NCBI RefSeq assembly: GCF_037042905.1
Contig: NC_087255.1
Coordinates: forward strand, 10,416,001 to 10,480,000
DNA: 64,000 bases
Direction: 5' to 3'
Origin: Lytechinus pictus
Lineage: Eukaryota
In this document: in pieces, positions 4,592 through 23,043 of the stretch
How the letters are laid out: every line of letters begins with the position of its first letter
How positions within the stretch are numbered: position 1 is the first letter of the stretch
The notes under the pieces: generated by a model
Told to the model about the DNA's origin: nothing
What the model saw: the letters and a program-made list of their open reading frames with translations, nothing else
Databases searched by the model: none
Translations under genes and position numbers: made by a program

Positions 4592-4896
4592 TTATGGTTC
4601 TTTTTCTTCGTATGTGTATAAATTCATCGAGTCCTTAGGTCCCTTTTGGGCATATTCTTCCCAGGAGCCGTCATACACTGCTACGTCTTCCTTCCCCACC
4701 AGGAAGGCGCTCATGGCTAGGATGGAGGCTGTGATTCCAATGTAGCATGACGAGGTCAAAGGTCGGGACAGGTCGATGCCGCGTGACTTGAAGAGGTGTC
4801 GGAGGTCGTCGGGTGACCTGAACTTAGTGCCGTCATCGTTGAGAACGTTGTTGAAAGGGATGTTTGTCGCCATCTTCATGATACCAAGGGGGGTAT
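4592..4896 (-). CDS. Sulfurtransferase paralog A (TST/MPST rhodanese family), exon 3 of 3 with catalytic Cys
   Basis: Acceptor tttttctgtgcttag|AT (phase 1). Encodes DLSRPLTSSCYIGITAS and the C-terminal rhodanese signature VAVYDGSWEEY. Gene model join(complement 11551-11676, 7690-8281, 4592-4896) = 340 aa. Confidence 0.93.
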
Positions 4897-5029
4897 CTAA
4901 GCACAGAAAAAGGGAACCCGTTGCATAAATGTTACTGTTTTGGTAACTTCGAGATCAAATGAACATTGTAGGAGGGATGGGGTGACTATCAATATAAAGG
5001 ATAACAATTACGTTGAAGTGTCAAGAAGA

Positions 5030-7110
5030 TATGGTGACTATCAAAGAGGAAAAATGAACAATATAAGATAAAAGGTGGCGACCAGATTGAAAAAAGGCAA
5101 AAAAAAGGGTGACGATCAGAGGAAAAGGGCGACGATCAGAGGAAAAGGGTGACGATCAGAGGAAAAGCGTGACGATCAAAGAGAAAGGTTGATGATCAAA
5201 TAGAAAGGGTGATGATCAAAGATAAAGATTGACAATCAAAGGGAAAAGGTGACGATCAAAGAGAAAGGTTGACGACCAAAGGGAAAGGGGTACGATAAAA
5301 AAAATGGATGACGATCAAACAGAAAGGTGGATGATCAAAGAGAAAGGGTGACGATCAAAGAGATAGGATGACGATCAAAGAGAAAGGGTGGTGATCAAAC
5401 AGAAAGGGTGGCGATCAAAAAGTAAGGGTGATGATCAAATGGAAAGGGTGACGATCAAAGAGAAAAGTTGATGATCAAACAGAAAGGGTGACGATCAAAC
5501 AAAAAGGGTGGCGATCAAAAAGAAAGGGTGATGATCAAAGGGAAAGGGTGACGATTAAACAGAAAGGGTGACGATCAAAGAGAAAGAAAGATGATCAGAG
5601 AGGAAAGGCGACGATCAAAGAAAAAGTTGACGATCAAAGAGGTTGACGATCAAAGAGAATGGGTAACGGTTAAAGAGAAAGAGTGACGTTCAAAGAGAAA
5701 GGGTGACGATCAAAGGGAAATGGTAACGGTTAAAGAAAAAGGGGTGACGTTCAAAGGGAAGGGTGACGATGAAAGAGAAAGGATGACGACCAAAGAGGAT
5801 GACGATCAAAGAAAAGTGTGACGCTCAAAGAGAAAGGGTGACGATCAAAAAGAAAGGTTGACGATCAAAGAGAAAGCTTGATGATCAAAGGGAAAGGGTG
5901 ACGATCACAGAGAAAAGTTGACGATCAATGAGAAAGGGTGACGATCAAAGAAAAGGGTAAAGATAAAAAAGGAGAAAGGGTGACGATCAAAGAGAAAGGT
6001 TGACGATCAAAGAGAAAGTTTTGATGATCAAAGGGAAAGGTGACGATCACAGAGAAAAGTTGACAATCAATGATAAAGGGTGGTGATCAAACAGATAGGG
6101 TGATGCTCAGAGAGAAAAGGTGACGATCAAAGAGAAAGGTTGACGAGCAAAGAGAAAGGTTGACGAGCAAAGAGAATGAAAGACGATCAGAGAGGAAGGT
6201 TGACGATCAAAGGGAAAGGGTGCTGATCAAAGATAAAGGGTGACGATCAAATAAAAGGGTAAAGATAAAAAAGGAGAAAGGGTGACGATCAAAGAGAAAG
6301 GGTGAAGAACAAAGAGAACGGGTGATGATAAAAAAAGAAAGGATGATGATCAAAGAAAGGGTGGTGATCATGAGAAAAGGTGATGATCAAAGATAAAGGT
6401 TGACGATCAAAAAGGGATGACGATCAAAGAAAAAGGGTAACGGTTAAAGGAAATGGGGTGACGTTCAAAGGTAAGGGTGACGATCAAAGGGAAAGGGTGG
6501 TGATCAAAGAGAAAGGGTGACAATCAAAGAGAAAGGGTGACGATCAAAGAGAAAGTGTGATGATCAAAGAGAAAGTGTGGTGATTAAAGGGAAAGGGTGA
6601 TGAACAAAGGGAAAGGGTGATGATCAAAGGGAAAGGGTGACGATCAAAGAGAAAGGATGACGATCAAAGAGAAAGGTTGACGAACAAAGAGAAAGGTTGA
6701 TGATCAAAGAGAATAGTTGACGATCAAAGAGAAAGGGTGATGATCAAATAGAAAGGTTGACGATGAAAAAGGATGATGATCAAAGAGAAAGATTGACGAT
6801 CAAACAGAAATAGTAACGATCATAGAGAAGGGATGACGATCATAGAGAAAGAGTGATGATCAAAGAGAAAGGGTGACGATCAAACAGAAGGGTGACGATA
6901 ACAGAGAACGGGTGACGATCATAGAGAAGGGATGACGATCAAATAGAAAGGGTGACGATTAAAGAGAAAGGGTAATAATCAAAGAGAAAGGTTGGTGATC
7001 AAAGAGGAAGGGTGATGATCAAAGGGAAAGGATGACGATCAAAGAGATTAGGGCTGTAGATCAAAGAGAATGGGGGACGATAAAACAGAAAGGATGATGA
7101 TCATTTAGAA
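5030..7110. repeat. Purine-rich ~20-bp minisatellite (consensus GAGAAAGGGTGACGATCAAA), roughly 100 copies, intronic
   Basis: Directly visible tandem array inside intron 2 (4897-7689) of paralog A. Confidence 0.95.
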
Positions 7111-7689
7111 TGTGTGACCATTATCTTAAAAGGGTGTCAATGAAGAAGAAAAGTCGATGTTTAGAAGGAAATAGTGAAGATCAACGACAAAGGGTAAAAA
7201 TTAAAAAATGCTGTTCATGAAATCATACGGGGAACCACAAACAAAATGCCACTTTGTTTGCACAATATATTTTTGGAACGAATTTTGTCGTTTGTCATAA
7301 ATTACCGAATTGCTGGCGATAAAATGAGAAGCAAAAGAGGGGAGAATATTTAATTCAATGGAAAATTCATCCAGAGGAGGGCTGTCCTGCCGAACCCCCG
7401 GATCTGCCACTGTGTAAATAAAAAAAGATAAGGGCCACTCAGACATAGGATGTTGGTCAAAGCGAAAAGCAAATGATTGATTCAGAAATACTCGCAACGA
7501 TCATAGAAATCATGGAAAAGTAAAAGGGTGATTGGCAATTAAAAATGCACACTGAACGACAGAAAAGCGGTAAAAAATAGTTGTTGTGACATGTGGTCAC
7601 TTTCTTGAGCAGATACGGTAGTCAAAGAGAAGTGGTGACGACTGAAGAGACAGGCTGCTAAAGTAATAACTGAGTAACGAGCATACTAC

Positions 7690-8281
7690 CTTCATAAACA
7701 GAAGGCTTCGATCCATCATACCATTCCTCAAGACGAGCATCCATGATCTGGAATTCTTTATCCTTCACGTTCTGTAATATGTCTTCGAAACCCTTGTAGA
7801 GTTCCTCGCGTCTCTCCGTCACCTTGAACTCGGCAGCTTCTGGCGCAGGCGGTGGTACCTCCGTCACCATTCGGTTCTCCGCCATCCACTGCGGAAGCCC
7901 GCCGTCCAGTACGGAGATGGCATCGTGGTTGAAATACCGGAACATCCACCATATCCTCGGTGCCGTCATGACCTTGACCTGCTCCTCGTAGAGAACGACG
8001 TGCGTGTCGTTGTCGACGCCGAGTGTCTCTCCTACGTACTCGGAAAACTTCTCGGGAGTCGGGACGGTGAAACGATAGGGCGAGTCCTTGTCGCAGAGTT
8101 GGTGTAGGTCAATGTGATGACTTCCGGGAATGCGTGCCTCCATAGTTTCCGCCCCGATCCTAGTAGCGTCAAGAACTCGGAAGGGTCTTCCTTCCGGTGT
8201 CTTCCGTGATGTCATTGCTTCTGCTATCCATTCCGTACTGACTAAAGCTGGGTACTGTGCTTTAGAGATTACAGTCGTATG
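7690..8281 (-). CDS. Sulfurtransferase paralog A, exon 2 (N-terminal rhodanese domain and linker)
   Basis: Acceptor cttcaacag|CAT (phase 0), donor G|gtagta (phase 1). YPALVSTEW, RVLDA, RIPGS, NDTHVVLY, APRIWWMFR, SVLDGG match rhodanese. Length 592 bp, identical to exon 2 of paralog B. Confidence 0.93.
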
Positions 8282-9036
8282 CTGTTGAAGATATTGGGTG
8301 TGGAATGAAAATATACAGATACTGTTATTGCAAGGAGTTTAAAGAGATGGAGAACCATCCAACACATTCCCTATAAAGCCGCTTTGATTCCGCAAGGATA
8401 AAATATGTTAGACATGTTCTTAATTGGATGTGTCTTGCAGATTGTAGACAAAAAATACCTACCTAACTACAGACTTACTGGCCAGATACGATATGATATA
8501 TGCTTTTGTAATTATGATTACTTTTCGCTGCCTCTGGTCGGTTATTAAGAACAGACACATTGCCAGCTTTTACAGGCGGGAGAAAAATAAATGTTGCAAT
8601 ATGTATTGAATTATTATATGAAATTACTCGACTGTCCGCATGTAGCCTCAACTGTGACACATAACATCACAAATAGATATAATCTCTGAAACTAATCTTA
8701 TTTTGGGGTAAAGTGGAAGTGTGTGGTAATTTGTAAAATGTTGATGTAAGGATTGTCAACATTCGAGGGTTTTCACATTTTGAAACTGTTTTCATACAAT
8801 ATTTCGCTCACTTTCAGGACATAATATAAAACTTTAAAATATATTTCGACATGTGTTTAATATCCACGTTTTTTTATCAAGTAAGTTTGGAAATATTCGC
8901 AGTTATATATTTTCAACACAAATCACTTTTCAGTTTCCCATGAAACTGGCGGCATCGCAGGAAGCCACCGAAGTATACAGTGCCCCTGTGTATTCTTTTG
9001 TAGGCCTGCTTCTTTAGAAATCAGAAGCTACATGAA

Positions 9037-10310
9037 CAGTGGCGTAGCTAGGATTTTTTTCCCGAGGGGGCACTGGGAGGGGTCCTTGCTTTTTCAGGGG
9101 GGGCACCGGCCATTTTTCCGGTGTGTGTATGTGTCCACAAGGGCGGATCCGACTTTCGCCAATAGGGGACGGAACCCGAAATTATCTTCACCTATATCAG
9201 TCACTTCTTAGTTTTATTCTTATAAACTAACATAAACATAAAATAATCTCATAAGCCTTATAAAAAGTGCGAGCGCGAAGCGCGAGCGATTTTTTTTTTT
9301 ACTTTAATGTATTTTTTCCTGAAAATTTAATTTTCTGGGCAATGTTATGTGTGATCCTGAACAAGATTCGTATGTAACTAGATGGTTACTGCGAACGCCA
9401 AGCGCGAACAGAAATTTTTTTCAACTGTTCTAGCATTATCGAAAAGGGACCTGTTATAGGACTGCTTACAGCTACCCACGGACACGGTATATATTTCAAT
9501 AATGCGAGCGCGAAGCGCGAGCAAATTTTTTGACATTCCGACCTAAAAATGGTCATTCTAAGCATTTTTTGTATTAATAAATGGGATAGGTATGTAACTA
9601 AACAATTGATGCGAGAGGAAGAAAATTGAGATTTTAGACCTAAAAGCGGGACACTCTATTCATATTTTGTAAGTCATAAACAGGATATAGTCAATCGGGT
9701 ATCATTAATAATAGACAATTATTGATATTCTGATGTGAAACTGGATAATTTAAGTACATTTTAAATAAAGAACATGCAGGCTATCGCGCATGTTTTAGAT
9801 TTAGACCTAGAATCTGGGCATTCTGAATACATTTGTTTAATGGAACATTGTGGAATACACGTAGACAATATGAACTTGGCAAATCAAACAATGTGACCAC
9901 GCAGCGTGAGCTTAAAATGCTGATATGTAGACCATAAAACGGACATTTTACAGAAATGTGTAAATGAAAAAAAAATGAAAGCTCGATGTCCGAGCTAAAA
10001 TACGTTTTGCATATCGACTCCAAAACTTGCTCCATATCAGCCTATCGAGCAAGATATTAATCCCATCGAACAGGCAATTATGGCGCGAAGCGCCAGCAAA
10101 AATTTTATATACTAATATGAAAAGATTTTTTTAAATTGCAAGTCTTCCCCTCACATTATTTCATTCACTCGTCTGCCTCTTATTTTCCTCTTCTTTTTTC
10201 TTCTGTCTTTCTTCTTTTCCTTTTTTCTTTCTTCTCCCTTTTTTGCTCTGCCAATTTTTTCAGGGGGGCACGTGCCCCCCAGGCCCCCCCCCCCCGTAGC
10301 TACGCCACTG
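9037..10310. mobile_element. Non-autonomous hAT-like DNA transposon (intron 1 of paralog A)
   Basis: TIR cagtggcgtagcta / tagctacgccactg; 8-bp TSD tacatgaa / tatatgaa (7/8); internal gcgagcgcgaagcgcgagc motifs. Confidence 0.8.
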
Positions 10311-11274
10311 TATATGAATTAATTTGCATTTCGTTGTCACTCCATCTCTTAAAGCTCTTTGGTTATTGCCTGATTTTATACATTTCTGTCAATTGAAAAT
10401 GCGTACAATTTGATGGCATTCCTTTTGTATCCCACAACTACTCAATGTTGTTAGAATAATGTTGGAACAAATTAATAGTTTAGGTGAAAGAATAAACAAA
10501 ATATTTTCCTAGCATCAAATGGTACGAATCCAAGGTCAGTTATGTTTGGGAAAAGGAATGATATTGCCCGATTATGTGGAATTGACAAAGACATATCTTT
10601 TCAATACTTATCTACCATTCTTCAATAAAGCTTGTCCTTGAAATAAAAACACGAAAATACAACATTTAATTACTTGTTTTATCTTTGCTTACTTAATTAC
10701 GTCATAATTTTCTTTTTTTTAAATATCATTCACGTTGCGGTAAATATAGTTTGTCATAGTGCAATATGTATGTAGAGTGTACATGTATGTAATTTTTGTC
10801 ATTAAGATTGAGTTTGTATGTGAAAACAGGTCAAAGTCGAATCATTTCATGAAATTGAAAAATCTATAGGCCATGAGGTATTATTGTCAATAGGTATGGA
10901 GGGACAAAGTCCTTAAATGTATTTATGGCGCGAACAACACCTCGTCTTCCGACAGGATATATGATAATAAAGACATACATTGCATATTAAAGTTTTGTTT
11001 TAGTAGATAACTTGCGTTCTAGATGCACCACCGGTATTATAAAACTAGAACTCACTCTTTGATTGATTAAGGATGGGTTGGGCTGTGCATGTGCAACAAT
11101 ACAATCTCAGTTCGATTTGTAGGTAAATACACTGCCACATGACAGATTGCCTTTTAACATGTAATTCCATTTTTTAAATGTTTTGTGAACACACTGCAAA
11201 ATAGATTATGCTTATAGAAAGTTGATTATAAAATGTTTCCTGTGGTATAATCCTATAATAATCCTGGTCAACAC

Positions 11275-11440
11275 GGGTCGTGTGGTCCAGTGGTTAGAAC
11301 ATTGGACTCATAATCGCAAGGTCGTGAGTTCGAATCCCCACTCTGCCAGTGTCTCCACTTTGGTAAAAAGGCCCGAGAGTAATATCAGTCGTCCATAAGG
11401 TCAGCCATTATGACTGATTAACCTAGACGTAAAATGTTTC
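11275..11440 (+). mobile_element. tRNA-derived SINE head (tRNA-Met-like, CAT loop)
   Basis: A box tggtccagtgg and B box gagttcgaatcc; acceptor and anticodon stems pair poorly and non-tRNA sequence follows. Confidence 0.6.
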
Positions 11441-11550
11441 CTAAGTAATTATACAAGCTTGGCGTTTACCAGCAAAACGCTGTCATGCTGAGTTCTGCCG
11501 GAGTTACCATAAATAGTAACAGAAACAGAAATATCAAAAGATGTACTTAC

Positions 11551-11676
11551 AATAGGCCTATGTGAAGCTGACGCGTTGCAGGTAATCTTTGTCCAGTAAA
11601 CACAGCTACTTCTGGCTCCATGATGGGATATTGTTCTGAACACTGTCATCGACTGTACAAACAATATATTCCTCAT
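11551..11676 (-). CDS. Sulfurtransferase paralog A, exon 1 (mitochondrial presequence-like)
   Basis: ATG at 11676, MRNILFVQSMTVFRTISHHGARSSCVYWTKITCNASASHRPI, phase-0 donor ATT|gtaagt. The start is homologous to paralog B (MRNVFVIQS), has no acidic residues, and splices to give RPI-HTT. Confidence 0.8.
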
Positions 11677-12249
11677 GACGGATGAGACCTTGACCAATAG
11701 CAAATTCAAGCATATAGGCCTATTAAGTACTATTGAATTTCCTATCCGTATACCCAGCCAAGCCTGCCACACGAGAAGTCGCTGAAAAACTAAGGTTGAA
11801 AGTCCTATTGTTGTATTGACAAGTATGTCAAATGTAAATAGGCACTTAATATCTGGGATTGTAGATCTTAAATGTTTGCTAACGAGGTATACAGAGTTAG
11901 CTTTGGTATACAGAGCTAACTCTATACCGATGTGTCTGATTGTGAATACTTTGAAAAGGGTGAAGATACAGAGTGACGATTTGTTGATGTTCTTCTTCTT
12001 TTGTGCTGGCGATTTCAAAACAACCCCATTGTATGCTGGGCATTATATTACATATGTCCCATCAGGAAAGAAGATCATAATTGCTCCTAGCCGTTGGTAA
12101 ACACTTTTATACTTCTTTGGAGATGCAGTTACCCTGATTCAAATGTACATTTCTTCAAAAGATTCCCTTCGAATATTCAGGCAAATTTACCGTTTTTAAA
12201 AGACACTTAAGAGGGATCAATTACGTAGCAAATGATCATAATCCATCTT

Positions 12250-12281
<32 letters not shown>

Positions 12282-13922
12282 CCACACCCATACCCTCACA
12301 CATCCACACACACATATCTACTTTCTAGAACTTATTAAATCTATAGTGTCTGGAGTTACATGATTTATGCCGGAAATATATAAGTAATATATAATGTTAT
12401 TTTCAAATACATGTATTATGTCAAAATCTATCACAGTGAGCTGAGCCACAAGGCAAAATTTCCCGTCTTTTAATTTCCCAGGCCTTGCGGCATAACCTTC
12501 ATCAATAAAGGATAACAGAACAGAATGCAAATTTATCTTCTAATTCGAGTACATCCAACAAACTACTTCTGATCCTCCAACAAACAAATATTTAATGTGC
12601 GTCGAATTTCACGATTACGGGAGCACAAGTTTTTTTTTTAATGTAAAACCGCACCTTTACCATATTTTGCCTGGTAAGTTTGACCTTATTCAAATGAATT
12701 CCTGATTTTGGAGGGCAATAGCGACTTTTGCCATTGATACCTTTCAGTAAAGGTGATACGAGCACATTGAATTCATAAAGCAAGTGTTCATTTATTTTTT
12801 CGCCAAAAATAAATCATGTTAACCATAAATGTATATGACAAGTGGACATAAAACAATGTAATGTTGACGCTTTAATAAACACAAAGGACAGGTAAATTAA
12901 TTTACACTTCTGGACTAAAATTCAATTACTTGTTTTGTTGTTTTTTGGGGGTAGTTTTGGTTTACTTTTAGTTTATTTAAAATTTCCACACACAAGAGAC
13001 GCATAAGTTCAACAAAATGTAACAATACATTGGCAAAAATATGCAACATGAACATTTTTCAAGACATTCAAATTAATAACAATGTATGCAAATGAAATAA
13101 ACAGGAGAAGTAATGTGGAGGAGTCCTAGAAAAGCAATCTTGTATAAAAAAAAAAAAAAAAAAAAAAAGACCACTAAAGGCACTATCTGTGATTAATTTT
13201 CACACGACTCAAATTCTTGTGGAGTTTGTCAAATTTTAGTTTCATAGGAATCGCATTGTCTTGTTCTTCAGCTGGTGAGAAACCTAAAAATGAGAAATAT
13301 ACACATTTTTTCCATACTTAAATGAGACAATTACACAGTTAAAATGATTGTATTATTTAACAAGTTCATTTCATATCAAAATTTTGATAAAAGCGAAAAA
13401 CGAAACAGCATCAATGAAATAAGTCATATCAGCTTACTTTGTAATGAACAGTCAGAACTCATTTTATCAAACAGGTAAAATTTGCCGATTCTGATTTAAA
13501 AAAATTATCGCTCATTCTACTGTGATTTCTTTGGTAAAAAATTGGGCAAATCTTCATGACCTTCAAGAAGTCATCAAGAGGTTATTAAAACAGTCCAATT
13601 CGCAACTCTTTGGTAAATCGAATCTACAGTCATTGACCCCGTTTATGATAGGAGTTTCATCATAATGGTTTGAGATATGATTACATTTCGACGGGTTTTA
13701 CTTTGCTAGTCGAGAAAAGTACTATTGTCTGCGTAGACTGCATGGCAAATTGAAATAAAATAGAATTGCGATTCCACAATATATAAGTCCCACTCTCTCT
13801 CTCTCTGTCTTCTTTGTGCTTCTGCAAAATGGCATTATTCGTCATAACATCCTGACTAGAATTAATTCAGCTAAATCCCCGTCATCCACCCATCGAAATA
13901 TCAATAGTGCATGTTGTCAATT

Positions 13923-14236
13923 CTATCCATATGGGTTGCTCTTTGGTTTCTCCTCATACAGAGTCATCGATTCTAAAGGCCCTTTCTGGGAGTACTCTTC
14001 GAACGACCCATCGTAGAGGGCCACATCTTCTTTTCCCGCAACGTAAGCGCCGAGGATCAGGGTGCATGCAGTGATCCCAACGGCGCACTGGGAGGTCAAA
14101 GGGCGGGAAAGGTCGACGCCCTTTGACCGGAAGAGCGCCTTGAGGTCGTCGGCTGATTTGAACTTGCTGGTACCGTCGACGTAGAAGTTTGGGTAAGGGA
14201 TGTTGGCGGCCATCTTCATGATGCCCAGTTTCATAC
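13923..14236 (-). CDS. Sulfurtransferase paralog B (TST/MPST family), exon 3 of 3 with catalytic Cys
   Basis: Acceptor attatgcag|GT (phase 1). DLSRPLTSQCAVGITAC and VALYDGSFEEY. Gene model join(complement 16733-16831, 14535-15126, 13923-14236) = 334 aa. Confidence 0.93.
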
Positions 14237-14534
14237 CTGCATAATTGAATGACGAAGAAAATATTAGTGAGGGAATGCCATGAGTCTGGAAGAATATTGG
14301 TAGACTTCTATTTTAGAGAAATGGACAGTCTTAACTAGAGTAAAAGCAAATTAGGGGTTCGTATTAGGATAAGCCACATCAAATATTTAATAAGGATATA
14401 TTTCAAAATAAAAATAGGCCTAATGTTAACAATAGTGGGCGAAAAGAGAGACAGGGTAACTTATGAAACAATCCCAGAGAAAAAATAATCACTACAATGA
14501 AGCTGTAATGGTTACATGATAGAGATCAAAATAC

Positions 14535-15126
14535 CTGGATAAGCAGAAGGTAGTGTTCCGTCATACCAATCAACAGGACGACTATCCATAATCTGAAACT
14601 GTGGTTTTTTCACATTCTGGAGGACTTCTTCGAAAGTCTTTAGGAGATCTTCACGTAGCTTGGGTACCTTGTAAGTCACCGGTGAGGGCGCCGGCGTCGG
14701 ATCTTCTGTGACCTCTCGCTTCTCTTCCATCCACTGCTGAAGACCACCGTCAAGCACCGACACGGCTTCATGGTCAAAGAGGCGGAACATCCACCAAATC
14801 CTAGGTGATGTCATGATCCTGACCCGGCCATCGTAGAGGACGACGTGCGTGTCGTTGTCGACGCCGAGTGTCTTCCCAACGAAATCGGCAAAGTACTCTG
14901 GAGATGGGATGGTGTAATGAAAAGGGGACTCTTTGTCGCAGAGGTGAGCAAGATCAACATGGACACTTCCTGGTATGTGTAACTTGTCTGTTTGCATTGC
15001 TATCCTTGTGGTGTCCAGGACTCGGAGAGGCCTTCCATCTGGTGTCTTCTGTCTTTCAAGTGATTCTGCTAGCCATCCTGTGTTCACCAACCCAGGAATA
15101 CTGCTGTAACTTGGCACCGAGGTGTG
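14535..15126 (-). CDS. Sulfurtransferase paralog B, exon 2
   Basis: Acceptor cctattttcag|CAC, donor G|gtattt. LVNTGWLAE, RVLDT, HIPGS, NDTHVVLYDG, PRIWWMFR, SVLDGG. Confidence 0.93.
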
Positions 15127-15810
15127 CTGAAAATAGGACAAAAGAAGGATATATATCTGAATGAAAAGACCAGTCTATTTGAATTTATATTTGTAAATAA
15201 TTTGTCAGAAGAGAGAGATTCCGTTCTAAAGTTATTGGGCAGAAGACAATTCTGTATCTATTCTGGTGGAGTATAAGGAGGCGAAGTGGAGGATGGGAGA
15301 ACAGGAAAGGACATTAATAAACGCAAGCCATGGTCAAACGAAGCATGGGGCAGACTCTGAGGCAGGAGGCAGCTACCCCCCCCCCCCCCGAAATTTTGAA
15401 ATAGGAAATATAGCATGTACGTTGATATCAACTAGGTTAGTTTTTCTTATCTATTGATATGAAAAAAAATGTTATTATTTGTTTTATATTCCACATCGGA
15501 AACTATCAAATTGTAGATGAAAAGGAGCAAATATGTCTATTTAATTTTCACATAAATTGAAATCATATTCTAAATACAGGCAAAGCAAAGAAGTTTAATA
15601 TCTCTTGAGTGTATGTGGGTCCGGGCGTCAAGTGCAATATAATTTCACATAATTTTGATCAAAGATTTAACAAAGAGATACATGTATAAGCAAAACACCG
15701 ACTCATGAGTTCGTTTGACAAATCTAAAAATTATCACATAATTCACTATTGGATATCAACATTCGAATTGAATATATATGATTATATTTAGATAGAAACT
15801 ATAAAAAAAA

Positions 15811-15990
15811 ATAGATAGATAGATAGATAGATGATAGATAGATAGATAAATAGGTATATAGATAGATAGATAGATGGATAGATAGATATTGACTCTGGAG
15901 AGAGAGATCCAAATTCAAATTCAAATTCGATAGATAGATAGATAGATAGATAGGTAGATAGATAAACAGGTAGATAGATAGATAAACAGG
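15811..15990. repeat. Interrupted (GATA)n microsatellite
   Basis: Directly visible, in intron 1 of paralog B. Confidence 0.9.
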
Positions 15991-16732
15991 TAATTTTAGA
16001 TTGGCATAAAGAATTTAAACACTAGACATGTCAGATAAGATAATATTGTACATTTTGCTATGCATACAATGTATTTGTGGTATTAACATTATTATGAGAT
16101 GTGGCCGATCCCCTGAAACGAGAGGATTGTGTTCCTTTTGGGATCAATATATGCTTTGTATCTTTCATAGCTATGCTTGTTGGATTTTGTTTGGGATATA
16201 AAGCCTATATCGTTTGTTTTTTTTGTTTTGTTTTTTGATCAATTGTGAACCCTGATTTATTGTTCTAATTGTTGACAAAAAAGATCAACTTTCTGCGCCC
16301 CCACTTGAATGAAATTCATGATCCACGTTTACCATACTGATGGACCCATCTAAACACTACGCATAATGATTTCACGTCTGAATTTGCAGACTACGCGTCA
16401 TAGCTCGAACTTTAATAATTTGTTCTACGTGCACAGACAGTACATTATAATTTGGTACAGGTGCATTATGGTAAACGATAAGTGGGCGTGTCGTGGGCTT
16501 GTTCTGGGCATGGCGTACTCGGTCTTGAAGTCTAGCGTGGGTTAAGTCCTTGGTTAAACTAGATCATGAAAGAATCACTCTCCGTAGATTATAAAGGTCT
16601 TCTTATGGGTCCCGGGGATATGAACCACGGCATAGCAAAGCAATTATGTCCCAGGTAATGTGTTTCATGCACAAATGCATATACGACATGCAGACATTGA
16701 AGCAGCGCTGCTAGCGCTTGTAATATACTCAC

Positions 16733-16831
16733 GAACTGCGATCCAGGGACGATGTTGACAACAGTCCTTCCGATGCTTGTTGCATTCCAGAGGCTTCTTC
16801 GTAGAGACTGGATTACAAACACGTTCCTCAT
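16733..16831 (-). CDS. Sulfurtransferase paralog B, exon 1 (mitochondrial presequence-like)
   Basis: MRNVFVIQSLRRSLWNATSIGRTVVNIVPGSQF, phase-0 donor TTC|gtgagt; splices to give SQF-HTS. Arg/Ser-rich with no Asp/Glu. Confidence 0.82.
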
Positions 16832-19800
16832 TATTTCAGAATCACCTCAAGCTCTTAAATACGAATGCAGAGATGGAGATTATTAAAGCTATTTCAGCAA
16901 TATGGTTTTAACACAGAGTTACATCTCCCCGGCCCCGTTATATTATATATACAGCTTGTACGCATGAGAAACATTTTGGCAACATGCCAGCGATTTTAGT
17001 CACTGGGCGTACAGGTGCAGGTAGCTAGTGTAAGAGGGGCAAGGCTATATCGGAGGGTGATGTTATTATTGCCTATTTTGGGTTATGGCTATAAGGTCAG
17101 ACCTCTCTTTTCGAAAGTTGCCCTCCCTTCTTACCTTTTCGTTTGTTTTCCTTATTCTTCTTTCGATCCCCTTATATTCTTGAAAAATCATAGGGACACC
17201 GGGAGGTCGCCCGCCTGCATGACCCCCCCCCCCCCACACACACACACACACACATAGCGCCTCCCCTGAAATAACCAATATTTGATTTAATCGTGATCCT
17301 ATATGGTCCAAGGCGTAGGCTTTCAAAGAGGGGGACATGCACTGAGAAAATTAAGGCACCTAGCTTGAAAAAGATCAAAAAAAGAGACAGATAAACGACC
17401 ACGACGATTCTTAAATCCGAGAATAGATCTAATATATTTTTTTTTTCAAAGTTTTCTCAACATTTAAGTTTTCTGTTAGGAAATGAGAACTGACTCATTT
17501 GAAAGCGTTTAAGTAAGGGAGTCAGAAAAAAAATCATATTGAATTTTTGGGTGCCATATGAAATAAATATGACGTGCCATTGATTAATCCACGTGGTGGA
17601 TTTGGGGTGCTTGTCACATTTGTCTTTTTAGGCGGCAAATATTATTTCCTGCCTATGGCACATACCCTTTGCTTCGGTTGTTGGCAACTTAATTTCAATG
17701 GTACATTACAAGCATATGCACCCCATCAACGTTTCCTTTTGAAAAAAAAAAATCCTTTCACCTATAGTACTCCTTCATTTCTTTTTTTCAAATCCCCCAG
17801 CACACACACACTCACACAATGCCTTTTAACTCCCGGGCGAGTCTTCCCCCTCTAGATAGGCCATGTATGCCTTCATAATGACAACTTCATTACTGATATA
17901 TCCAACATGGAAATGAAATGAAAATCCTGAACAGAAAAAACAATGAGGATTTCCTTCACCGACTATTGATCACAAAAGACCTCTGACAAGTCCGGTCAGA
18001 GATACTTTATATTCAATACCCCCATTTTAAAGAGTCACCAATCAGATCCTACTCATCGTGATTGACAGATTGATTCAATTGGCATAAGATCATTTCGACA
18101 AAGAGGGCATAAGTCCGTACGTCGATATATGCTTTGTGACGTATTTCAACTTGAAAAGAAAATCGATACTGACAACCCCCTCTTAATTTGTGACAAGATG
18201 CCCATGAAGTCACGAGGGATCTTTGCTTCAATTATAGCTTTAAATTTTATGCTTCAAATGAGACATGAAAGTGTGAAAAGTTGTCACCTATTAAAACTGA
18301 AGTACACTTGTATTTTACCAATTTTACCTTTTTAATGGAGAGAATAATATTGCTGATTTTAGCCACTTTTTATCCCATCTTCGGCAATGATTCTAGTAAT
18401 TCATTAGAAATTGAAAAATATGAATTCCTTAAATTACAAAAACCGATTAAAGAATGGTAAAGAGTTAAGTTTAAAATGATTATCGTCAAATTAATGGTTT
18501 TGTACTGTCACTTGACGTACACTCGATCGAAATTTTAATAGTATTGGTTAAACAGTGTTATGAATGAAATAATTTATAATGTATTTAAGCTTGCAGCCCG
18601 TAAGGTTGTAATGAAATGTTATATATATATATATATATTGTTCAGTCGAGTTGACTGAGGATAGGCATTGTTCATAAGCAATGCTGACGGCAATTTATAT
18701 ATTGAAAGTATGATATTGCGTGTTTTGGCAGATTAATGTTAAAAGTTGGACGGCCGTTGAAGAAATATTAATCTAATATCATAACAATCATGATATCATC
18801 AATAAATCACAAAGACCACATTCAATTGAGTAATATAGGAATACTTCATTATCTGCCATGATAAATATCTCTATCAAATGATATAATTATAAATCAAAGT
18901 TTTGTTATTTAATATAAGATCAATATCAACATAAAAACTTGCTTAATACCTTCTCCAATATCTGTTCTATACGAGATTGATGATTTTTTTTTTGTATTAA
19001 ATAGGACAGTTTTTCATAGGCCTAACCCTCACTTTGTGAGCCCTACACAAGATTTCCCATTTTTCATAATAATCGATAGCTATTGATCATACGCTTATTT
19101 ATTGCCACTCGGGATAACAAAGCGCTTTGAGATGCAATATATGCCTCCCAGGAGGCGACCGTCAAGTTTACATTAGCGGCAGAGAATTTAAGTTATCATC
19201 GTCATCATCACATCCCCAAATTCCATTTGAAAAGCTTATTAAAAATGACTATTGCTAAAAATGACGAACTATTTTGTTACTTTTCCCCCTATACTATATG
19301 TTTTTATAAGGAGGCTGCACTCTCCAAGCTCCGCTTTTTAGCAGCCTCCTCCATTTCAGACCTGTTTATATAATAATCTTGATTATAATTTTTGCACATA
19401 GAGATTTGAATTATGTTTTCCGGCTCATATTTGTATATCAAAATGCACGAAACAAATCGTAAATGCTGGAGATGGAAATAATAAACAACATAAAAATGAA
19501 ATGAAATTTAGGCAAACCTTTAAATTCCCCATTTTGCCATTCGACAAAATTTATGATTTCTCACCATTTTACTCATTCGTGTTCGCATGTGTGTCAAATT
19601 ATTTATTCTTATAAAACTTGCAGAACATGTTTTGATTTTTGTATATTGATTTGATTTTGACCTCGCCCCCAGAGAAATACCCGCTTGTGATTCTGCACGT
19701 CTGGGTCTTTAAAAAAATCAATGCAGAAAGAGTTGCGTTTAAACGCAAGCCAAAAAATCAATCGCAAGTCCCAAATGCGCGCTGTTGATTGGTTGAAAAT

Positions 19801-20026: not shown

Positions 20027-21568
20027 ACCCATCTTGCTAGCAAGTCAAGCTTCTTCCGACAAATTGATAACAACTCGTCCCTCTTCTCTCCACTCTTATA
20101 GAGGTGTTGTTCCCAGAATGCAGTCATCAGGATTTACAAGGCGATTTCTTTTATGCCACGTCGGCTCTAAAAGAAAGTCCCGTCGAACAAAAGCAGACGA
20201 TCGATCGCAGCGATCGATTTGATAAAGAGGCAGATGGGAAATCGCGTGGAGTTGTCAAAAGGCAAGGGCGGTGTGGGCTCTGTGTGTCCCACTGGATACA
20301 ATTGTTATTTTCAACAGGCTTATATTTTGAAAAGACGAGAAGGGGAGAAGTTGTTTACTCAGACTCAAGACTTAGCAGCCTTAGTATTTACAATTTCTCG
20401 CCTAAACCTCTAGGCTCTTGATATACTCTGAGGACCCTTCGGACGATTTCATGAATTCGGCATTCGACTGATGTTTCTTGGTATCGTACTCGTCCGTGTC
20501 TTTTCCGCCACATTATAAAGTTTTTATCGAACCAATTTATGATCACTCAAGGAGATTCGATTAGATATAAAAAGGATTAACATCGTGGGGTACAATGGAT
20601 GCGGTTATGTGGATCTAATTACAAATCATCACTCGTGTCAATCTACGATGCTATTCATAATGTTCTCATCTGGTCAGTGGAGTGTTTCTTTTCATAATGC
20701 GGAGATAATTCTGGTCGAGTGCGCTTTAATTTGAAGACTGTCATTCTTAACATCATCTTAAGTGTTATCATGGATATTAGATTACCTGAAATTATTAGCG
20801 AAGTCATCGGTAAAAACATCGAGGAATGAAACAAACTGAATAAATCATTGGAAAATTATCAAATCATCATGGTAAAAATCAACATCCATTTGGACTGAAC
20901 GTTAAGAAGTATGAAATGGTTCGACTGTTCGTTCACCTGTATATTTAGTGGCACTCTTTTAAATCTTTGTTTATCATTTGTTGAATCATCGCGTGTTTCA
21001 CTGTTTTGATCAAAGTCTCCTGAAACAATATATTGGGCAAAAAATAAATAAAAACACACGTGATAAATGTGAACGACTTGAACAAGAAATGAAATCGTGT
21101 TTTACCACTTGATCTACATCAGCATTCTTCTTTACTTCACCGTGTGCAATAACGATCTACGATACTTATGTTCTTAATTACTACTAATTGAGGAAAGGTG
21201 TGATATCTAAATTCTTTATTCTGGAGAGGGTCTAAAGTTGACTACTAATGTTTAAACAACCTTAATGACAAACACTTCAAGATCCACCAAGTTCAGAACT
21301 CTTCAATGAATATTATGTCAAGTTAACCAGTGTGCGTGACACCTTGAGACGCCTTGGCTTTATCTCGTGATAATGACTTCAAGTTCTACCATGTGGAATT
21401 GACACATTTTTCTAGAACATTCGATTTTGAAACCATGAAATAAACCGTGAACACGCCATTTTTTTGAGAGTTCAGATATAACTTGTGTTCTGCTCGTGTT
21501 CATTTGTAAAAAAAAATATTTTGCACGTGAAACAACAGCAGTTTCTGCAAAAGCAGGATGACTTAACG

Positions 21569-22832
21569 ATGAGCGGAAATAAAGAAAGTCGGCACCGTGG
21601 CAGTGGTGTTGCCAAGACCCGGGCCGACCGCGCTCCGCGCGAGGGTGACGATCGTACTAGAAATCGGCGACTAGCCGACATACGGAGGGGCAACAAGACC
21701 AGACACCAACTTGAGTTACTAACCAACGCCCATGGAGGGATTAAAAAACAATCATCGACGCCCTCATCATGGCGATCCGAATCAAGAACGTTGGAGACGT
21801 GGTCGGCGAAGGAGAAGAGAGAAAGGACGTTGCCTAAACCTCCAGATTTAGAAACCAGGAATTCTTGCCCGGCGTTGCCCGCAATATCCCCGTCGTTGGG
21901 AATTCATATTGACAGTGAGTCAAGACAACACAGTCCTCAAGCAGGGTTGTACGGTCCTCGAGCTTTCGGCTCAAATGCCAAAACAACTAAACAGGAAAGT
22001 CTTAACTTAAACTTGCCAAGCGATAAACCGAGGGTAATGAGGGACAACTCATTAGATTTGATCGCGAATGTTCGTCACCCGTCATCAAAAGTTGCAGCAA
22101 AACATAAATTTGGAAACCAAAACTCCAAATTGACTTTACCTCCCAAGAACGATTATGTTAAGGCTATTCAATACGAATCAAAACCGAAGAGAACGTTCAG
22201 TGTTCCAGACATTGCCAACTCAACTCAGCCATCAGACCTGTCAGAAGCTCGCCAAATTGCCATCAAAGAAGCAGAAATTTCTAACTCCAATAAAGACAGA
22301 AGGGAATATGATTCAACCAACGGAACGAAACACCGTTATTCTGTACTTCTTAAAGGAGGCACCTCAGCAACGAAAGCACCGTATGTGGCTAGAGTTGGAA
22401 GCGAAACCATCGGTCAGAATACAGTGTCTAAAAGTGATGATGATCGTCACGCTGATGATGCCCACAGTTGTCTCCAAAGAACGTCAACCGATGACGCGGC
22501 AACGAAAGATGGCGAAGATCGTCTGCAAAAACCAACGACCGCTCCTCGTAAACGCGAGGGCGTCTCTTCTCCAAGTCGCCGTCGCGGAAGGCACCTGAGA
22601 AGCCACAAAGAACTCTTTGCTTTCCAACAAGACCTGCTTCTTCCTCGATACAGGAAGTTGGCTGGGATAAGTGGCGGCGATGCAGATGTGCCGCCGAATG
22701 ATCGACGGTCTGCCGACGAAAGCCAAGGAGGAGGCGCGTTTACGCGACGATCGGACGCAAGGGAAGTCTTTGAGAAGGTCCGTCTTATCATCAAGGGCCC
22801 AGAGAAGGTTGAGACTGTCACCAAGCCTACAG
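21569..22832 (+). CDS. Uncharacterised basic, low-complexity protein, coding exon 1
   Basis: 421 open codons, markedly GC-richer than the flanks; ATG at 21569; phase-1 donor ACA G|gtaatt. No recognisable domain. Confidence 0.8.
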
Positions 22833-23043
22833 GTAATTACCTCCATCATTAAGACTATCGTCTAATTAGACAATATACTAATTTTCATAACAATCTTAAA
22901 TTATAACTTTATAGTGATAATGATGAGATTGATTATCCTAAACAAAATGAATCATGATAACGAGAATTATGATGATGATAATAATAATTGTGGTAATGAT
23001 AATAATAGTGATCACAATAAAAATAGTAACAATAACAACATTG

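What the first reader, a model, noticed from the sequence alone, without database searches (positions are those of the whole stretch)
4592..16831. Tandem rhodanese-family pair with a rebuilt active site: candidate sulfurtransferases of new specificity
Seen: both paralogs keep the fold motifs and the catalytic Cys but share the same unusual substitutions. The active-site loops are CYIGIT and CAVGIT, DSRAQGR becomes DARLEEW/DSRPVDW, DASWY becomes DATRI/DTTRI with a shortened following loop, GHI(P/R)G becomes GIMKM, and the final EW becomes EY. Known: TST uses CRKGVT with Arg186/Lys249 to bind thiosulfate, MPST uses CGSGVT with Arg187/Arg196, and loop sequence determines donor specificity. Inference: loss of the cationic residues and gain of hydrophobic ones in two intact, diverged genes suggests a third class acting on a different, perhaps uncharged or bulky, organosulfur or selenium substrate. 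Echinoderm sulfur metabolites such as ovothiol or pulcherrimine, or dietary/sediment sulfur compounds, are speculative candidates.
Basis: partly seen in the sequence, partly recalled or inferred. Interest (0 to 1): 0.75.

Follow-up and report, generated by a model that had tools for sequence, protein, structure and literature searches.

The report
Sea urchin rhodaneses with rebuilt pocket
Two neighbouring, expressed sea urchin genes encode sulfur-transfer enzymes of the rhodanese/MPST fold that keep the catalytic cysteine but have lost every residue known to bind the usual substrates. They belong to an uncharacterised, sea-urchin-only gene family whose substrate is unknown.

Summary
Two intact three-exon genes lie head to tail on the minus strand: A at 11676-4592 and B at 16831-13923. 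Both encode two-domain TST/MPST-type rhodaneses with loops CYIGIT and CAVGIT, Arg186->Trp, GH(I)(P/R)G->GIMKM and DASWY->DATRI/DTTRI with a 6-residue deletion.

Both genes are spliced and transcribed. Pairwise dN/dS is 0.16-0.24. A model of the L. pictus ortholog superposes on bovine TST and human MPST (TM 0.89-0.91).

They are not an isolated pair. The genome has six such genes: one canonical MPST (CGSGVT, both Arg, His74) and five non-canonical ones. All named non-canonical members (16 sequences from Lytechinus, Strongylocentrotus and Diadema) form one clade (100/99). Its nearest relatives are echinoderm MPSTs, not vertebrate TST. The window pair is the youngest branch; it alone carries a presequence-like first exon and Trp35->Arg.

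The shared substitutions are inherited, not convergent. EW->EY is not special. New basic residues at positions 104, 205 and 35 mean the pocket is not simply uncharged.

Most likely these are mitochondrial persulfide carriers with a changed donor or acceptor. The substrate, including ovothiol, is untested.

The scan already reported the sister cluster of this family elsewhere in this genome (s1-324900).

Verdict: a new variant of a known kind, of moderate interest.

The parts
16733..16831 (-). Gene B exon 1: ATG plus 33 codons, presequence-like (4 Lys/Arg, no Asp/Glu)
   Evidence: tblastn of the L. pictus ortholog P0001 residues 1-33. The junction 16733|15126 is seen in two transcript contigs and one raw RNA read. 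Residues 1-38 of the model have pLDDT below 50.
14535..15126 (-). Gene B exon 2: N-terminal rhodanese domain, linker and start of the catalytic domain (DTTRI, DSRPVDW)
   Evidence: Pfam PF00581, E 1.1e-13. phmmer to bovine rhodanese, E 6e-42. Splice sites were read. The junction is confirmed.
13923..14236 (-). Gene B exon 3: rest of the catalytic domain (GIMKM, CAVGITA, EEY) and the stop codon
Evidence: phmmer to human and bovine TST, E about 1e-18.
12808..13922 (-). Gene B 3' UTR (about 1.1 kb)
   Evidence: Transcript contig X1 record 6 runs continuously from 12808 to 14232.
11551..11676 (-). Gene A exon 1: ATG plus 42 codons, presequence-like (5 Lys/Arg, no Asp/Glu)
   Evidence: tblastn of P0005 residues 1-45. 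Contig X15 record 7 joins 11551-11772 to a paralog-like exon-2 piece.
7690..8281 (-). Gene A exon 2: N-terminal rhodanese domain, linker and start of the catalytic domain (DATRI, DARLEEW)
   Evidence: Pfam PF00581, E 2.7e-11. The acceptor and donor were read. It is 98.5% identical to L. pictus P0005.
4592..4896 (-). Gene A exon 3: rest of the catalytic domain (GIMKM, CYIGITA, EEY) and the stop codon
   Evidence: The sequence was read. It is 98% identical to P0005 residues 240-340. This junction was not covered by the reads laid.

Best explanation
The two genes encode two-domain sulfurtransferases of 334-340 residues. They belong to a sea-urchin-specific family that arose by duplication of the echinoderm 3-mercaptopyruvate sulfurtransferase gene.

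The family keeps the fold, the catalytic cysteine and the six-residue cradle loop (C-x-x-G-x-T). It most likely still forms a cysteine persulfide and passes on sulfane sulfur.

The residues that bind 3-mercaptopyruvate or thiosulfate are replaced by aromatic or aliphatic residues. These are both arginines, the Ser-His-Asp triad of MPST and the Arg-Lys of the TST loop. The donor or acceptor is therefore probably not one of these small oxyanions. It is more likely a thiol or persulfide-type partner (a low-molecular-weight persulfide, polysulfide or a protein persulfide) held by hydrophobic or aromatic contacts.

The window pair is the youngest subclade. It gained an N-terminal exon with the composition of a mitochondrial presequence, and an Arg at position 35. 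I read it as the mitochondrial branch of the family.

Shown here: gene structure, expression, selection, phylogeny, residue replacements and fold. Inferred: persulfide chemistry, changed substrate and mitochondrial location.
For: - Both genes are intact and spliced.
- Pairwise dN/dS is 0.16-0.24 in all comparisons among the Lytechinus and S. purpuratus copies.
- In all 16 clade members Cys247, Gly250 and Arg182 are invariant. Arg186 is Trp in 16/16, the MPST Arg (position 195) is Tyr/Trp/Leu, position 248 is Phe/Asn/Tyr/Ala, position 249 is Val/Ile, and His72 is Phe/Tyr/Val.
- The clade has 100/99 support and a long stem. It sits with echinoderm MPSTs at 90/96, while vertebrate TST is nested inside vertebrate MPST.
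- The canonical MPST of the same genome keeps all these residues and shares the intron position and phase.
- An exhaustive profile search found only two cluster representatives above 500 bits; the next scored 285. A sea cucumber is represented only by a canonical MPST among the clusters looked up.
- The model has pLDDT 87.7, with TM 0.89-0.91 to bovine TST and human MPST.
- Exon 1 has 3-5 basic and no acidic residues, and is disordered in the model.
- A review states that the loop charges confer thiosulfate binding and that R248G/K249S raises Km 17-fold (PMC9369223).
Against: - No enzymatic or localisation data exist, and nothing was found in the literature searches.
- New basic residues could rebuild an anion site, so thiosulfate- or sulfite-linked activity is not excluded. 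These are Lys/Arg104 in 13/16, Lys205 in 11/16 and Arg35 in the window subclade.
- I could not measure distances in the model, because no coordinates are returned.
- Non-canonical loops also occur in annelid, brachiopod and mollusc paralogs, one of which is deposited under the name TST (Urechis). An odd loop alone therefore does not prove a new specificity.
- The presequence reading rests on composition only.
Confidence: 0.6

Rival explanations
1. They are ordinary sulfide-detoxifying sulfurtransferases. On this reading the window subclade is the sea urchin's functional equivalent of vertebrate mitochondrial TST (persulfide + sulfite -> thiosulfate, or thiosulfate:cyanide). An anion site would be rebuilt from relocated basic residues (Arg35, Lys/Arg104, Lys205) in place of Arg186 and Lys249.
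For: The genome search found no vertebrate-type TST, only one MPST plus the non-canonical genes. Vertebrate TST is a vertebrate-only offshoot of MPST. The window subclade alone gained both a presequence-like exon and Arg35. Lys/Arg104 is conserved clade-wide.
Against: The loop has no charge at all. Both classical arginines are aromatic in 16/16 sequences. Removing the loop charges from TST strongly weakens thiosulfate use (PMC9369223). Whether residues 35, 104 and 205 reach the cysteine was not measurable here.
Confidence: 0.2
2. They handle a specific non-anionic organosulfur or selenium metabolite of echinoderms, such as ovothiol or another thiohistidine, as acceptor or donor. It would include an EanB-like direct sulfur transfer to an imidazole.
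For: The pocket is aromatic and aliphatic. The tandem-rhodanese EanB, which sulfurates a histidine betaine from a Cys persulfide, is among the structural matches, though at only 18-19% identity. No OvoB-like lyase is known in most metazoans (PMC8433421).
Against: There is no direct evidence of any kind. Ovothiol synthesis genes are widespread in marine invertebrates (PMC8433421), whereas this family was found only in echinoids. EanB matches any tandem rhodanese equally. The known pathway needs a PLP lyase, not a rhodanese.
Confidence: 0.1
3. They are non-catalytic: structural or regulatory rhodanese-fold proteins, for example an accessory subunit like the sulfurtransferase subunit of Yarrowia complex I. 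The cysteine would be kept for redox sensing or by chance.
For: All canonical substrate-binding residues are lost. The complex I sulfurtransferase subunit is a detectable relative (6yj5).
Against: Cys247, Gly250 and the loop length are invariant across 16 sequences from Lytechinus, Strongylocentrotus and Diadema. dN/dS is typical of enzymes. The family has repeatedly duplicated and kept all copies intact.
Confidence: 0.1

Closest known systems
3-mercaptopyruvate sulfurtransferase (MPST/TUM1, EC 2.8.1.2), e.g. human 4JGT and this genome's own copy at G000:C10:25188-25189.5 kb
   Same: It shares the two-domain rhodanese fold (TM 0.91, rmsd 1.7 A) and the same intron position and phase. It has a catalytic Cys in a six-residue loop. 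It is the phylogenetic source of the clade. Three family members lie next to the canonical gene.
   Different: The loop is C-[YFAN]-[VI]-G instead of C-G-[ST]-G. Both pyruvate-binding arginines are aromatic. The Ser-His-Asp triad residues are replaced. The GH(I)PG motif is replaced. The window pair has an added presequence-like exon.
Vertebrate thiosulfate sulfurtransferase (rhodanese, TST, EC 2.8.1.1), e.g. bovine 1RHD/8Q5Z
   Same: It is the best sequence and structure match (E 6e-42, 40% identity, TM 0.89). It is the name NCBI gives these genes. It is located in mitochondria.
   Different: The urchin genes are not orthologs, because TST arose inside vertebrate MPST. CRKGVT, Arg186, Phe106/Tyr107 and (in the window pair) Trp35 are all replaced.
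Non-canonical TST/MPST paralogs of other marine invertebrates (Urechis unicinctus 'TST' CEVGVT, Capitella CNSGVT, Lingula CNTGMT, Argonauta CQLGVT)
   Same: They are two-domain proteins with an uncharged loop that is neither GS nor RK, and they lack Arg186. They occur beside a canonical MPST in the same animals.
   Different: They form separate clades. None has Trp186 or GIMKM. They show that loop diversification in this family is recurrent, which lowers the surprise.
Sister cluster of the same family in this genome (earlier scan finding s1-324900)
   Same: It is the same family with the same Trp186 and hydrophobic loop. I checked it here as loci L002, L004 and L005.
   Different: Those copies lack the presequence exon. 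They keep Trp35 and the longer 36-46 loop.

Membership tests
Two-domain TST/MPST rhodanese family (Pfam PF00581 x2) | N-terminal inactive plus C-terminal catalytic rhodanese domain joined by a linker | tested here: met
   Pfam hit on exon 2. Full-length phmmer matches to bovine TST over both exons. Model TM 0.89-0.91 to TST and MPST. Exon 3 alone gives no Pfam hit because the intron splits the domain.
Two-domain TST/MPST rhodanese family (Pfam PF00581 x2) | Catalytic cysteine at the start of a six-residue loop C-x-x-G-x-[TS] | tested here: met
   CYIGIT and CAVGIT. Cys and Gly are invariant in 16/16 clade members and in a 40-sequence alignment.
Thiosulfate sulfurtransferase (vertebrate TST) | Cationic loop CRKGVT (Arg248, Lys249) | tested here: not met
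   Position 248 is Tyr or Ala and position 249 is Ile or Val.
Thiosulfate sulfurtransferase (vertebrate TST) | Arg186 at the anion site | tested here: not met
   Trp in both genes and in 16/16 clade members.
Thiosulfate sulfurtransferase (vertebrate TST) | Orthology to vertebrate TST | tested here: not met
   TST is nested within vertebrate MPST. The urchin clade groups with echinoderm MPST.
Thiosulfate sulfurtransferase (vertebrate TST) | Thiosulfate:cyanide activity | not testable with these tools
   This needs an enzyme assay.
3-mercaptopyruvate sulfurtransferase | Loop CG[ST]GVT | tested here: not met
3-mercaptopyruvate sulfurtransferase | Two arginines binding the substrate carboxylate (human Arg188 and Arg197; bovine positions 186 and 195) | tested here: not met
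   Trp and Tyr in both window genes. Across the clade, W 16/16 at 186 and Y9/W5/L2 at 195. That these residues bind substrate is from my own knowledge of the rat and human MPST literature, not from a paper read here.
3-mercaptopyruvate sulfurtransferase | Ser250-His74-Asp63 triad (human numbering) | tested here: not met
   The aligned residues are Ile/Val, Phe/Tyr and His/Ala in the window genes. The genome's canonical MPST keeps Ser, His and Asp. The role of the triad is from my own knowledge.
3-mercaptopyruvate sulfurtransferase | Descent from the MPST lineage | tested here: met
   The echinoderm group has 90/96 support. The intron position and phase are shared. Paralogs are adjacent to the canonical MPST on C10.
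Mitochondrial matrix protein with cleavable presequence | N-terminal basic, acid-free, amphipathic extension | tested here: inconclusive
   The extension is 33-42 residues with 3-5 Lys/Arg and no Asp/Glu, is Ser/Thr-rich, and is disordered in the model. No dedicated predictor or localisation data were available.

The most novel reading that the evidence does not exclude
The echinoid clade is a third catalytic class of two-domain rhodanese. Its aromatic pocket (Trp186, Tyr/Trp195, Phe/Tyr248) would bind a neutral or aromatic thiol, such as ovothiol or another thiohistidine, or a lipophilic persulfide. The window pair would be its mitochondrial form. This would link sea urchin thiohistidine chemistry to sulfane-sulfur handling.
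Probability: 0.12. Interest if true: 0.7.

Novelty: new variant of a known kind. Interest (0 to 1): 0.45.

Why it matters
In the TST/MPST family, specificity is usually explained by the loop sequence and two arginines. Here a whole animal lineage has kept the cysteine and fold under purifying selection across Lytechinus, Strongylocentrotus and Diadema while replacing all of those residues, and it has expanded the result to five genes per genome.

Working out the substrate would broaden the known chemistry of animal sulfurtransferases. It would also clarify how sea urchins, which show no vertebrate-type TST in this genome search, handle sulfide and persulfides in mitochondria.

Lytechinus pictus is, to my knowledge, tractable for laboratory genetics, so knockouts are feasible.

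The surprise is limited, because loop diversification in rhodaneses is common and also occurs in other marine invertebrates.

Tried and rejected
- Literature: five full-text searches found no study of these proteins. The searches were sea urchin or Strongylocentrotus with sulfurtransferase or rhodanese, Urechis TST, and Arg187/Arg196.
- ENA fragments P0133 and P0160 carry the Trp motif. I tried to fetch their contigs to read the loop exon, but no DNA was served. By similarity they are echinoid c1-type exon-2 fragments.
- P0074 has Trp186 with a CRRG loop. Its only close relatives are unnamed transcript contigs, so its taxon and meaning stay open.
- Neighbouring open frames in the window gave no Pfam hits. 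There is therefore no contextual clue such as a sulfide-oxidation gene cluster.
- No tRNA or Rfam family lies in 4-17.5 kb.
- Rejected: pseudogene or artefact. Both frames are intact, the genes are spliced, and dN/dS is about 0.2.
- Rejected: 'EW->EY' as a diagnostic change. The canonical MPST has it too.
- Rejected: a clade-wide 'reciprocal Trp35/Arg186 swap'. Only the window subclade has Arg35; the other ten members keep Trp or Tyr at position 35.
- Not attempted: distances in the predicted model (no coordinates are returned), branch-site codon models (DNA for most members was not available), and complex prediction (no binding claim is made).


Full report
**1. What is in the sequence**

The window is AT-rich animal DNA. 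The minus strand between 4592 and 16831 carries two genes with the same three-exon structure.

| Gene | Exon 1 | Exon 2 | Exon 3 | Protein |
|---|---|---|---|---|
| A | 11676-11551 | 8281-7690 | 4896-4592 | 340 aa |
| B | 16831-16733 | 15126-14535 | 14236-13923 | 334 aa |

- All introns are GT..AG, and intron 2 is in phase 1 at the same codon in both genes.
- Each CDS has only its terminal stop.
- The genes are head to tail. About 1.1 kb separates the end of B's 3' UTR (12808) from A's start codon.

The proteins are 95-99% identical to Lytechinus pictus 'thiosulfate sulfurtransferase-like' proteins: P0005 for A and P0001 for B. The genome is therefore L. pictus or something very close to it. 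An earlier follow-up in this scan named it L. pictus.

**2. Check of the observation**

Exon 2 hits Pfam Rhodanese. Both exons align end to end with bovine and human TST, then MPST, with E 6e-42 and 1e-18.

- Loops CYIGIT (A) and CAVGIT (B) replace CRKGVT or CGSGVT.
- Arg186 is Trp (DARLEEW, DSRPVDW).
- Trp35 is Arg (DATRI, DTTRI), followed by a 6-residue deletion.
- GH(I)(R/P)G is GIMKM.
- The C-terminal motif is EEY.

The splice junction that creates 'G-M-K-L-G-I-M-K-M' is confirmed by transcript contigs, so GIMKM is not an intron artefact.

Two corrections are needed. First, EEY also ends the canonical MPST of this genome, and a hemichordate MPST has EY. Second, the two genes share the changes by descent, so they do not count twice.

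**3. Expression and selection**

I laid two RNA-seq runs and two contig sets on 11400-17000.
- A 2290-nt contig reads 12808-14232 | 14531-15126 | 16733-16997, with CT..AC ends. That is GT..AG on the minus strand, and the first joint can equally be placed at 14236|14535. This is a fully spliced gene B mRNA.
- A second contig, and one raw read, confirm the 15126|16733 joint.
- A 505-nt contig joins 11551-11772 to a diverged exon-2-like piece. This is gene A's exon 1 spliced to its own exon 2.
- Raw-read depth over B's exons is low (about 1-5).

dN/dS (NG86/YN00) was computed with the two S. purpuratus orthologs taken from locus L015:

| Pair | dN/dS |
|---|---|
| A-B | 0.24 / 0.16 |
| A-Sp1 | 0.17 / 0.18 |
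| B-Sp1 | 0.23 / 0.19 |
| Sp1-Sp2 | 0.20 / 0.24 |

This is purifying selection on every copy.

**4. The family in this genome and beyond**

Searching the whole assembly with each exon finds six genes:
- The two genes in the window, on C11.
- A cluster on C10 at 25.19-25.21 Mb, with a canonical MPST and two non-canonical genes.
  - The canonical MPST has GHMPG, CGSGVTA, DARSPARF...EPR and His at the triad position. I rebuilt it, and it has the same intron position and phase.
  - The non-canonical genes have GIMKM/CFVGVTA and GYILK/CFVGISA.
- One more gene at C10:5.05 Mb, with GTIHR/CNVGVTA.

No CRKGVT-type gene was found.

Database searches add members from S. purpuratus, L. pictus, L. variegatus, Diadema setosum and D. 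antillarum.

An exhaustive profile search of 1.84 billion cluster representatives gave two representatives above 500 bits, and the next scored 285. The sea cucumber Apostichopus appears only with a canonical MPST among the clusters I looked up.

**5. Phylogeny**

In maximum-likelihood trees:
- The 16 non-canonical echinoid sequences form one clade (100/99) on a long stem.
- That clade groups with echinoderm canonical MPSTs (90/96).
- Vertebrate TST is nested within vertebrate MPST.
- The urchin genes are therefore MPST-derived and are not TST orthologs, despite their database name.

There are four subclades:

| Subclade | Loop | Other features |
|---|---|---|
| c1 | CNVGVT | – |
| c2 | CFVGI[SA] | – |
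| c3 | CFVG[VI]T | – |
| c4 (window type) | C[YFA][IV]GIT | Presequence-like exon, Arg35, 6-residue deletion |

- c4 is nested in c3 above the Diadema branch. It therefore arose after the Diadema/camarodont split and before the Lytechinus/Strongylocentrotus split.
- Gene B branches off before A and the two S. purpuratus copies separate (100/99). The A/B duplication is therefore older than that split.
- S. purpuratus shows two recent head-to-head copies of A (dS about 0.18). No B ortholog appeared in what I retrieved.

**6. What changed and what did not (bovine numbering)**

Kept in 16/16 sequences: Cys247, Gly250 and Arg182. Phe/Tyr212 is also kept, and the loop length is unchanged.

| Position | Canonical residue | Non-canonical clade (16 sequences) |
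|---|---|---|
| 186 | Arg | Trp 16/16 |
| 195 | MPST's second Arg | Tyr 9, Trp 5, Leu 2 |
| 248 | Arg (TST) / Gly (MPST) | Phe 7, Asn 4, Tyr 3, Ala 2 |
| 249 | Lys (TST) / Ser (MPST) | Val 14, Ile 2 |
| 72 | His (MPST triad) | Phe / Tyr / Val |
| 61 | Asp (MPST triad) | Mostly Asn / His / Glu / Ala |
| 106 | Phe | Met 11, Lys 4, Leu 1 |
| 203 | His | Ile 9, Thr 4, Tyr 2, His 1 |
| 206 | Gly | Met and others |

The clade also gained basic residues: Lys/Arg at 104 (13/16, Gly in canonical proteins), Lys at 205 (11/16) and Arg at 35 (c4 only, 6/6).

The pocket is therefore rebuilt rather than merely stripped of charge.

At the sequence level this is real only in c4.

From my own knowledge of the bovine rhodanese and human MPST structures, positions 35, 106/107, 186, 195, 248 and 249 line the active-site cleft. 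I could not measure this, because the structure tool returns no coordinates.

**7. Fold**

An AlphaFold2 model of P0001 with a 40-sequence alignment has mean pLDDT 87.7 and pTM 0.85. Residues 1-38 are disordered, and confidence is somewhat lower around the shortened loop.

The model superposes on bovine TST (TM 0.89, 2.1 A) and human MPST (TM 0.91, 1.7 A).

Exon 1 has 3-5 Lys/Arg, no Asp/Glu and many Ser/Thr. That is the composition of a mitochondrial presequence. The three other subclades start directly at the conserved 'P-x-L-V-S-T-x-W-L'.

**8. Interpretation**

The most economical reading has three parts.
- The clade still does persulfide chemistry on Cys247. The cradle loop, the cysteine and selective constraint are all kept.
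- It no longer uses 3-mercaptopyruvate or thiosulfate in the classical way, because every residue that defines those specificities is gone. A review records that neutralising the TST loop raises the Km for thiosulfate 17-fold (PMC9369223).
- The window pair works in mitochondria.

The main rival is that relocated basic residues rebuild an anion site. The window pair would then be the urchin's analogue of mitochondrial TST.

Ovothiol synthesis is far more widespread than this family (PMC8433421).

A pseudoenzyme is unlikely, given the invariant Cys-x-x-Gly.

**9. Comparison and novelty**

Non-canonical loops without Arg186 also exist in separate clades from Urechis, Capitella, Lingula, Argonauta and Solemya. 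Diversification of this family in marine invertebrates is therefore recurrent, which tempers the surprise.

None of those other clades has Trp186 or GIMKM. I found no paper that characterises any echinoid member.

An unnamed transcript family (P0074, P0390) combines Trp186 with a cationic CRRG loop. It is an open lead on how the pocket evolved.

The same scan has already reported the C10 sister cluster of this family (s1-324900). This finding adds the presequence-bearing subclade, the phylogeny, the expression evidence and the selection evidence.

Verdict: a real, conserved, uncharacterised variant of a known enzyme family, of moderate interest.

Noticed in passing
window 5104-7103: A 2-kb minisatellite, with a 20-bp unit (AAAGGGTGACGATCAAAGAG) repeated about 100 times at 77% matches. 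It fills much of intron 2 of gene A and accounts for the strong GC/AT skew of 4-8 kb.
   Followed up: partly
window 11400-11586: This stretch is covered extremely deeply in RNA runs and contig sets of two organisms, with many loose ends at 11443, 11450 and 11495. It looks like a dispersed, highly transcribed repeat just downstream of gene A's exon 1. There is no tRNA or Rfam match.
   Followed up: partly
window 21485-22852 (+): A 455-codon open frame that is unusually long for this AT-rich DNA. It encodes a Ser/Arg/Lys/Asp-rich, probably disordered protein with no Pfam match.
   Followed up: partly
L015:156-15193 (S. purpuratus): S. purpuratus carries two head-to-head copies of the gene A ortholog, with dS about 0.18, loops CYVGIT and CFVGIT, and both intact. 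No gene B ortholog appeared in the data retrieved.
   Followed up: partly
P0074, P0390, P0395 (unnamed transcript contigs): These two-domain rhodaneses have Trp at the Arg186 position but a cationic CRRGIYA loop and an intact WHIPGS motif. They group loosely with echinoderm sequences. They could be an intermediate state or a case of convergence.
   Followed up: partly
G000:C10:25186691-25208206 (L002, L004, L005, L009, L011-L014): The canonical MPST and two non-canonical paralogs lie in tandem. The CFVGISA gene has more introns than the others: its N-terminal part matches as three separate pieces.
   Followed up: partly
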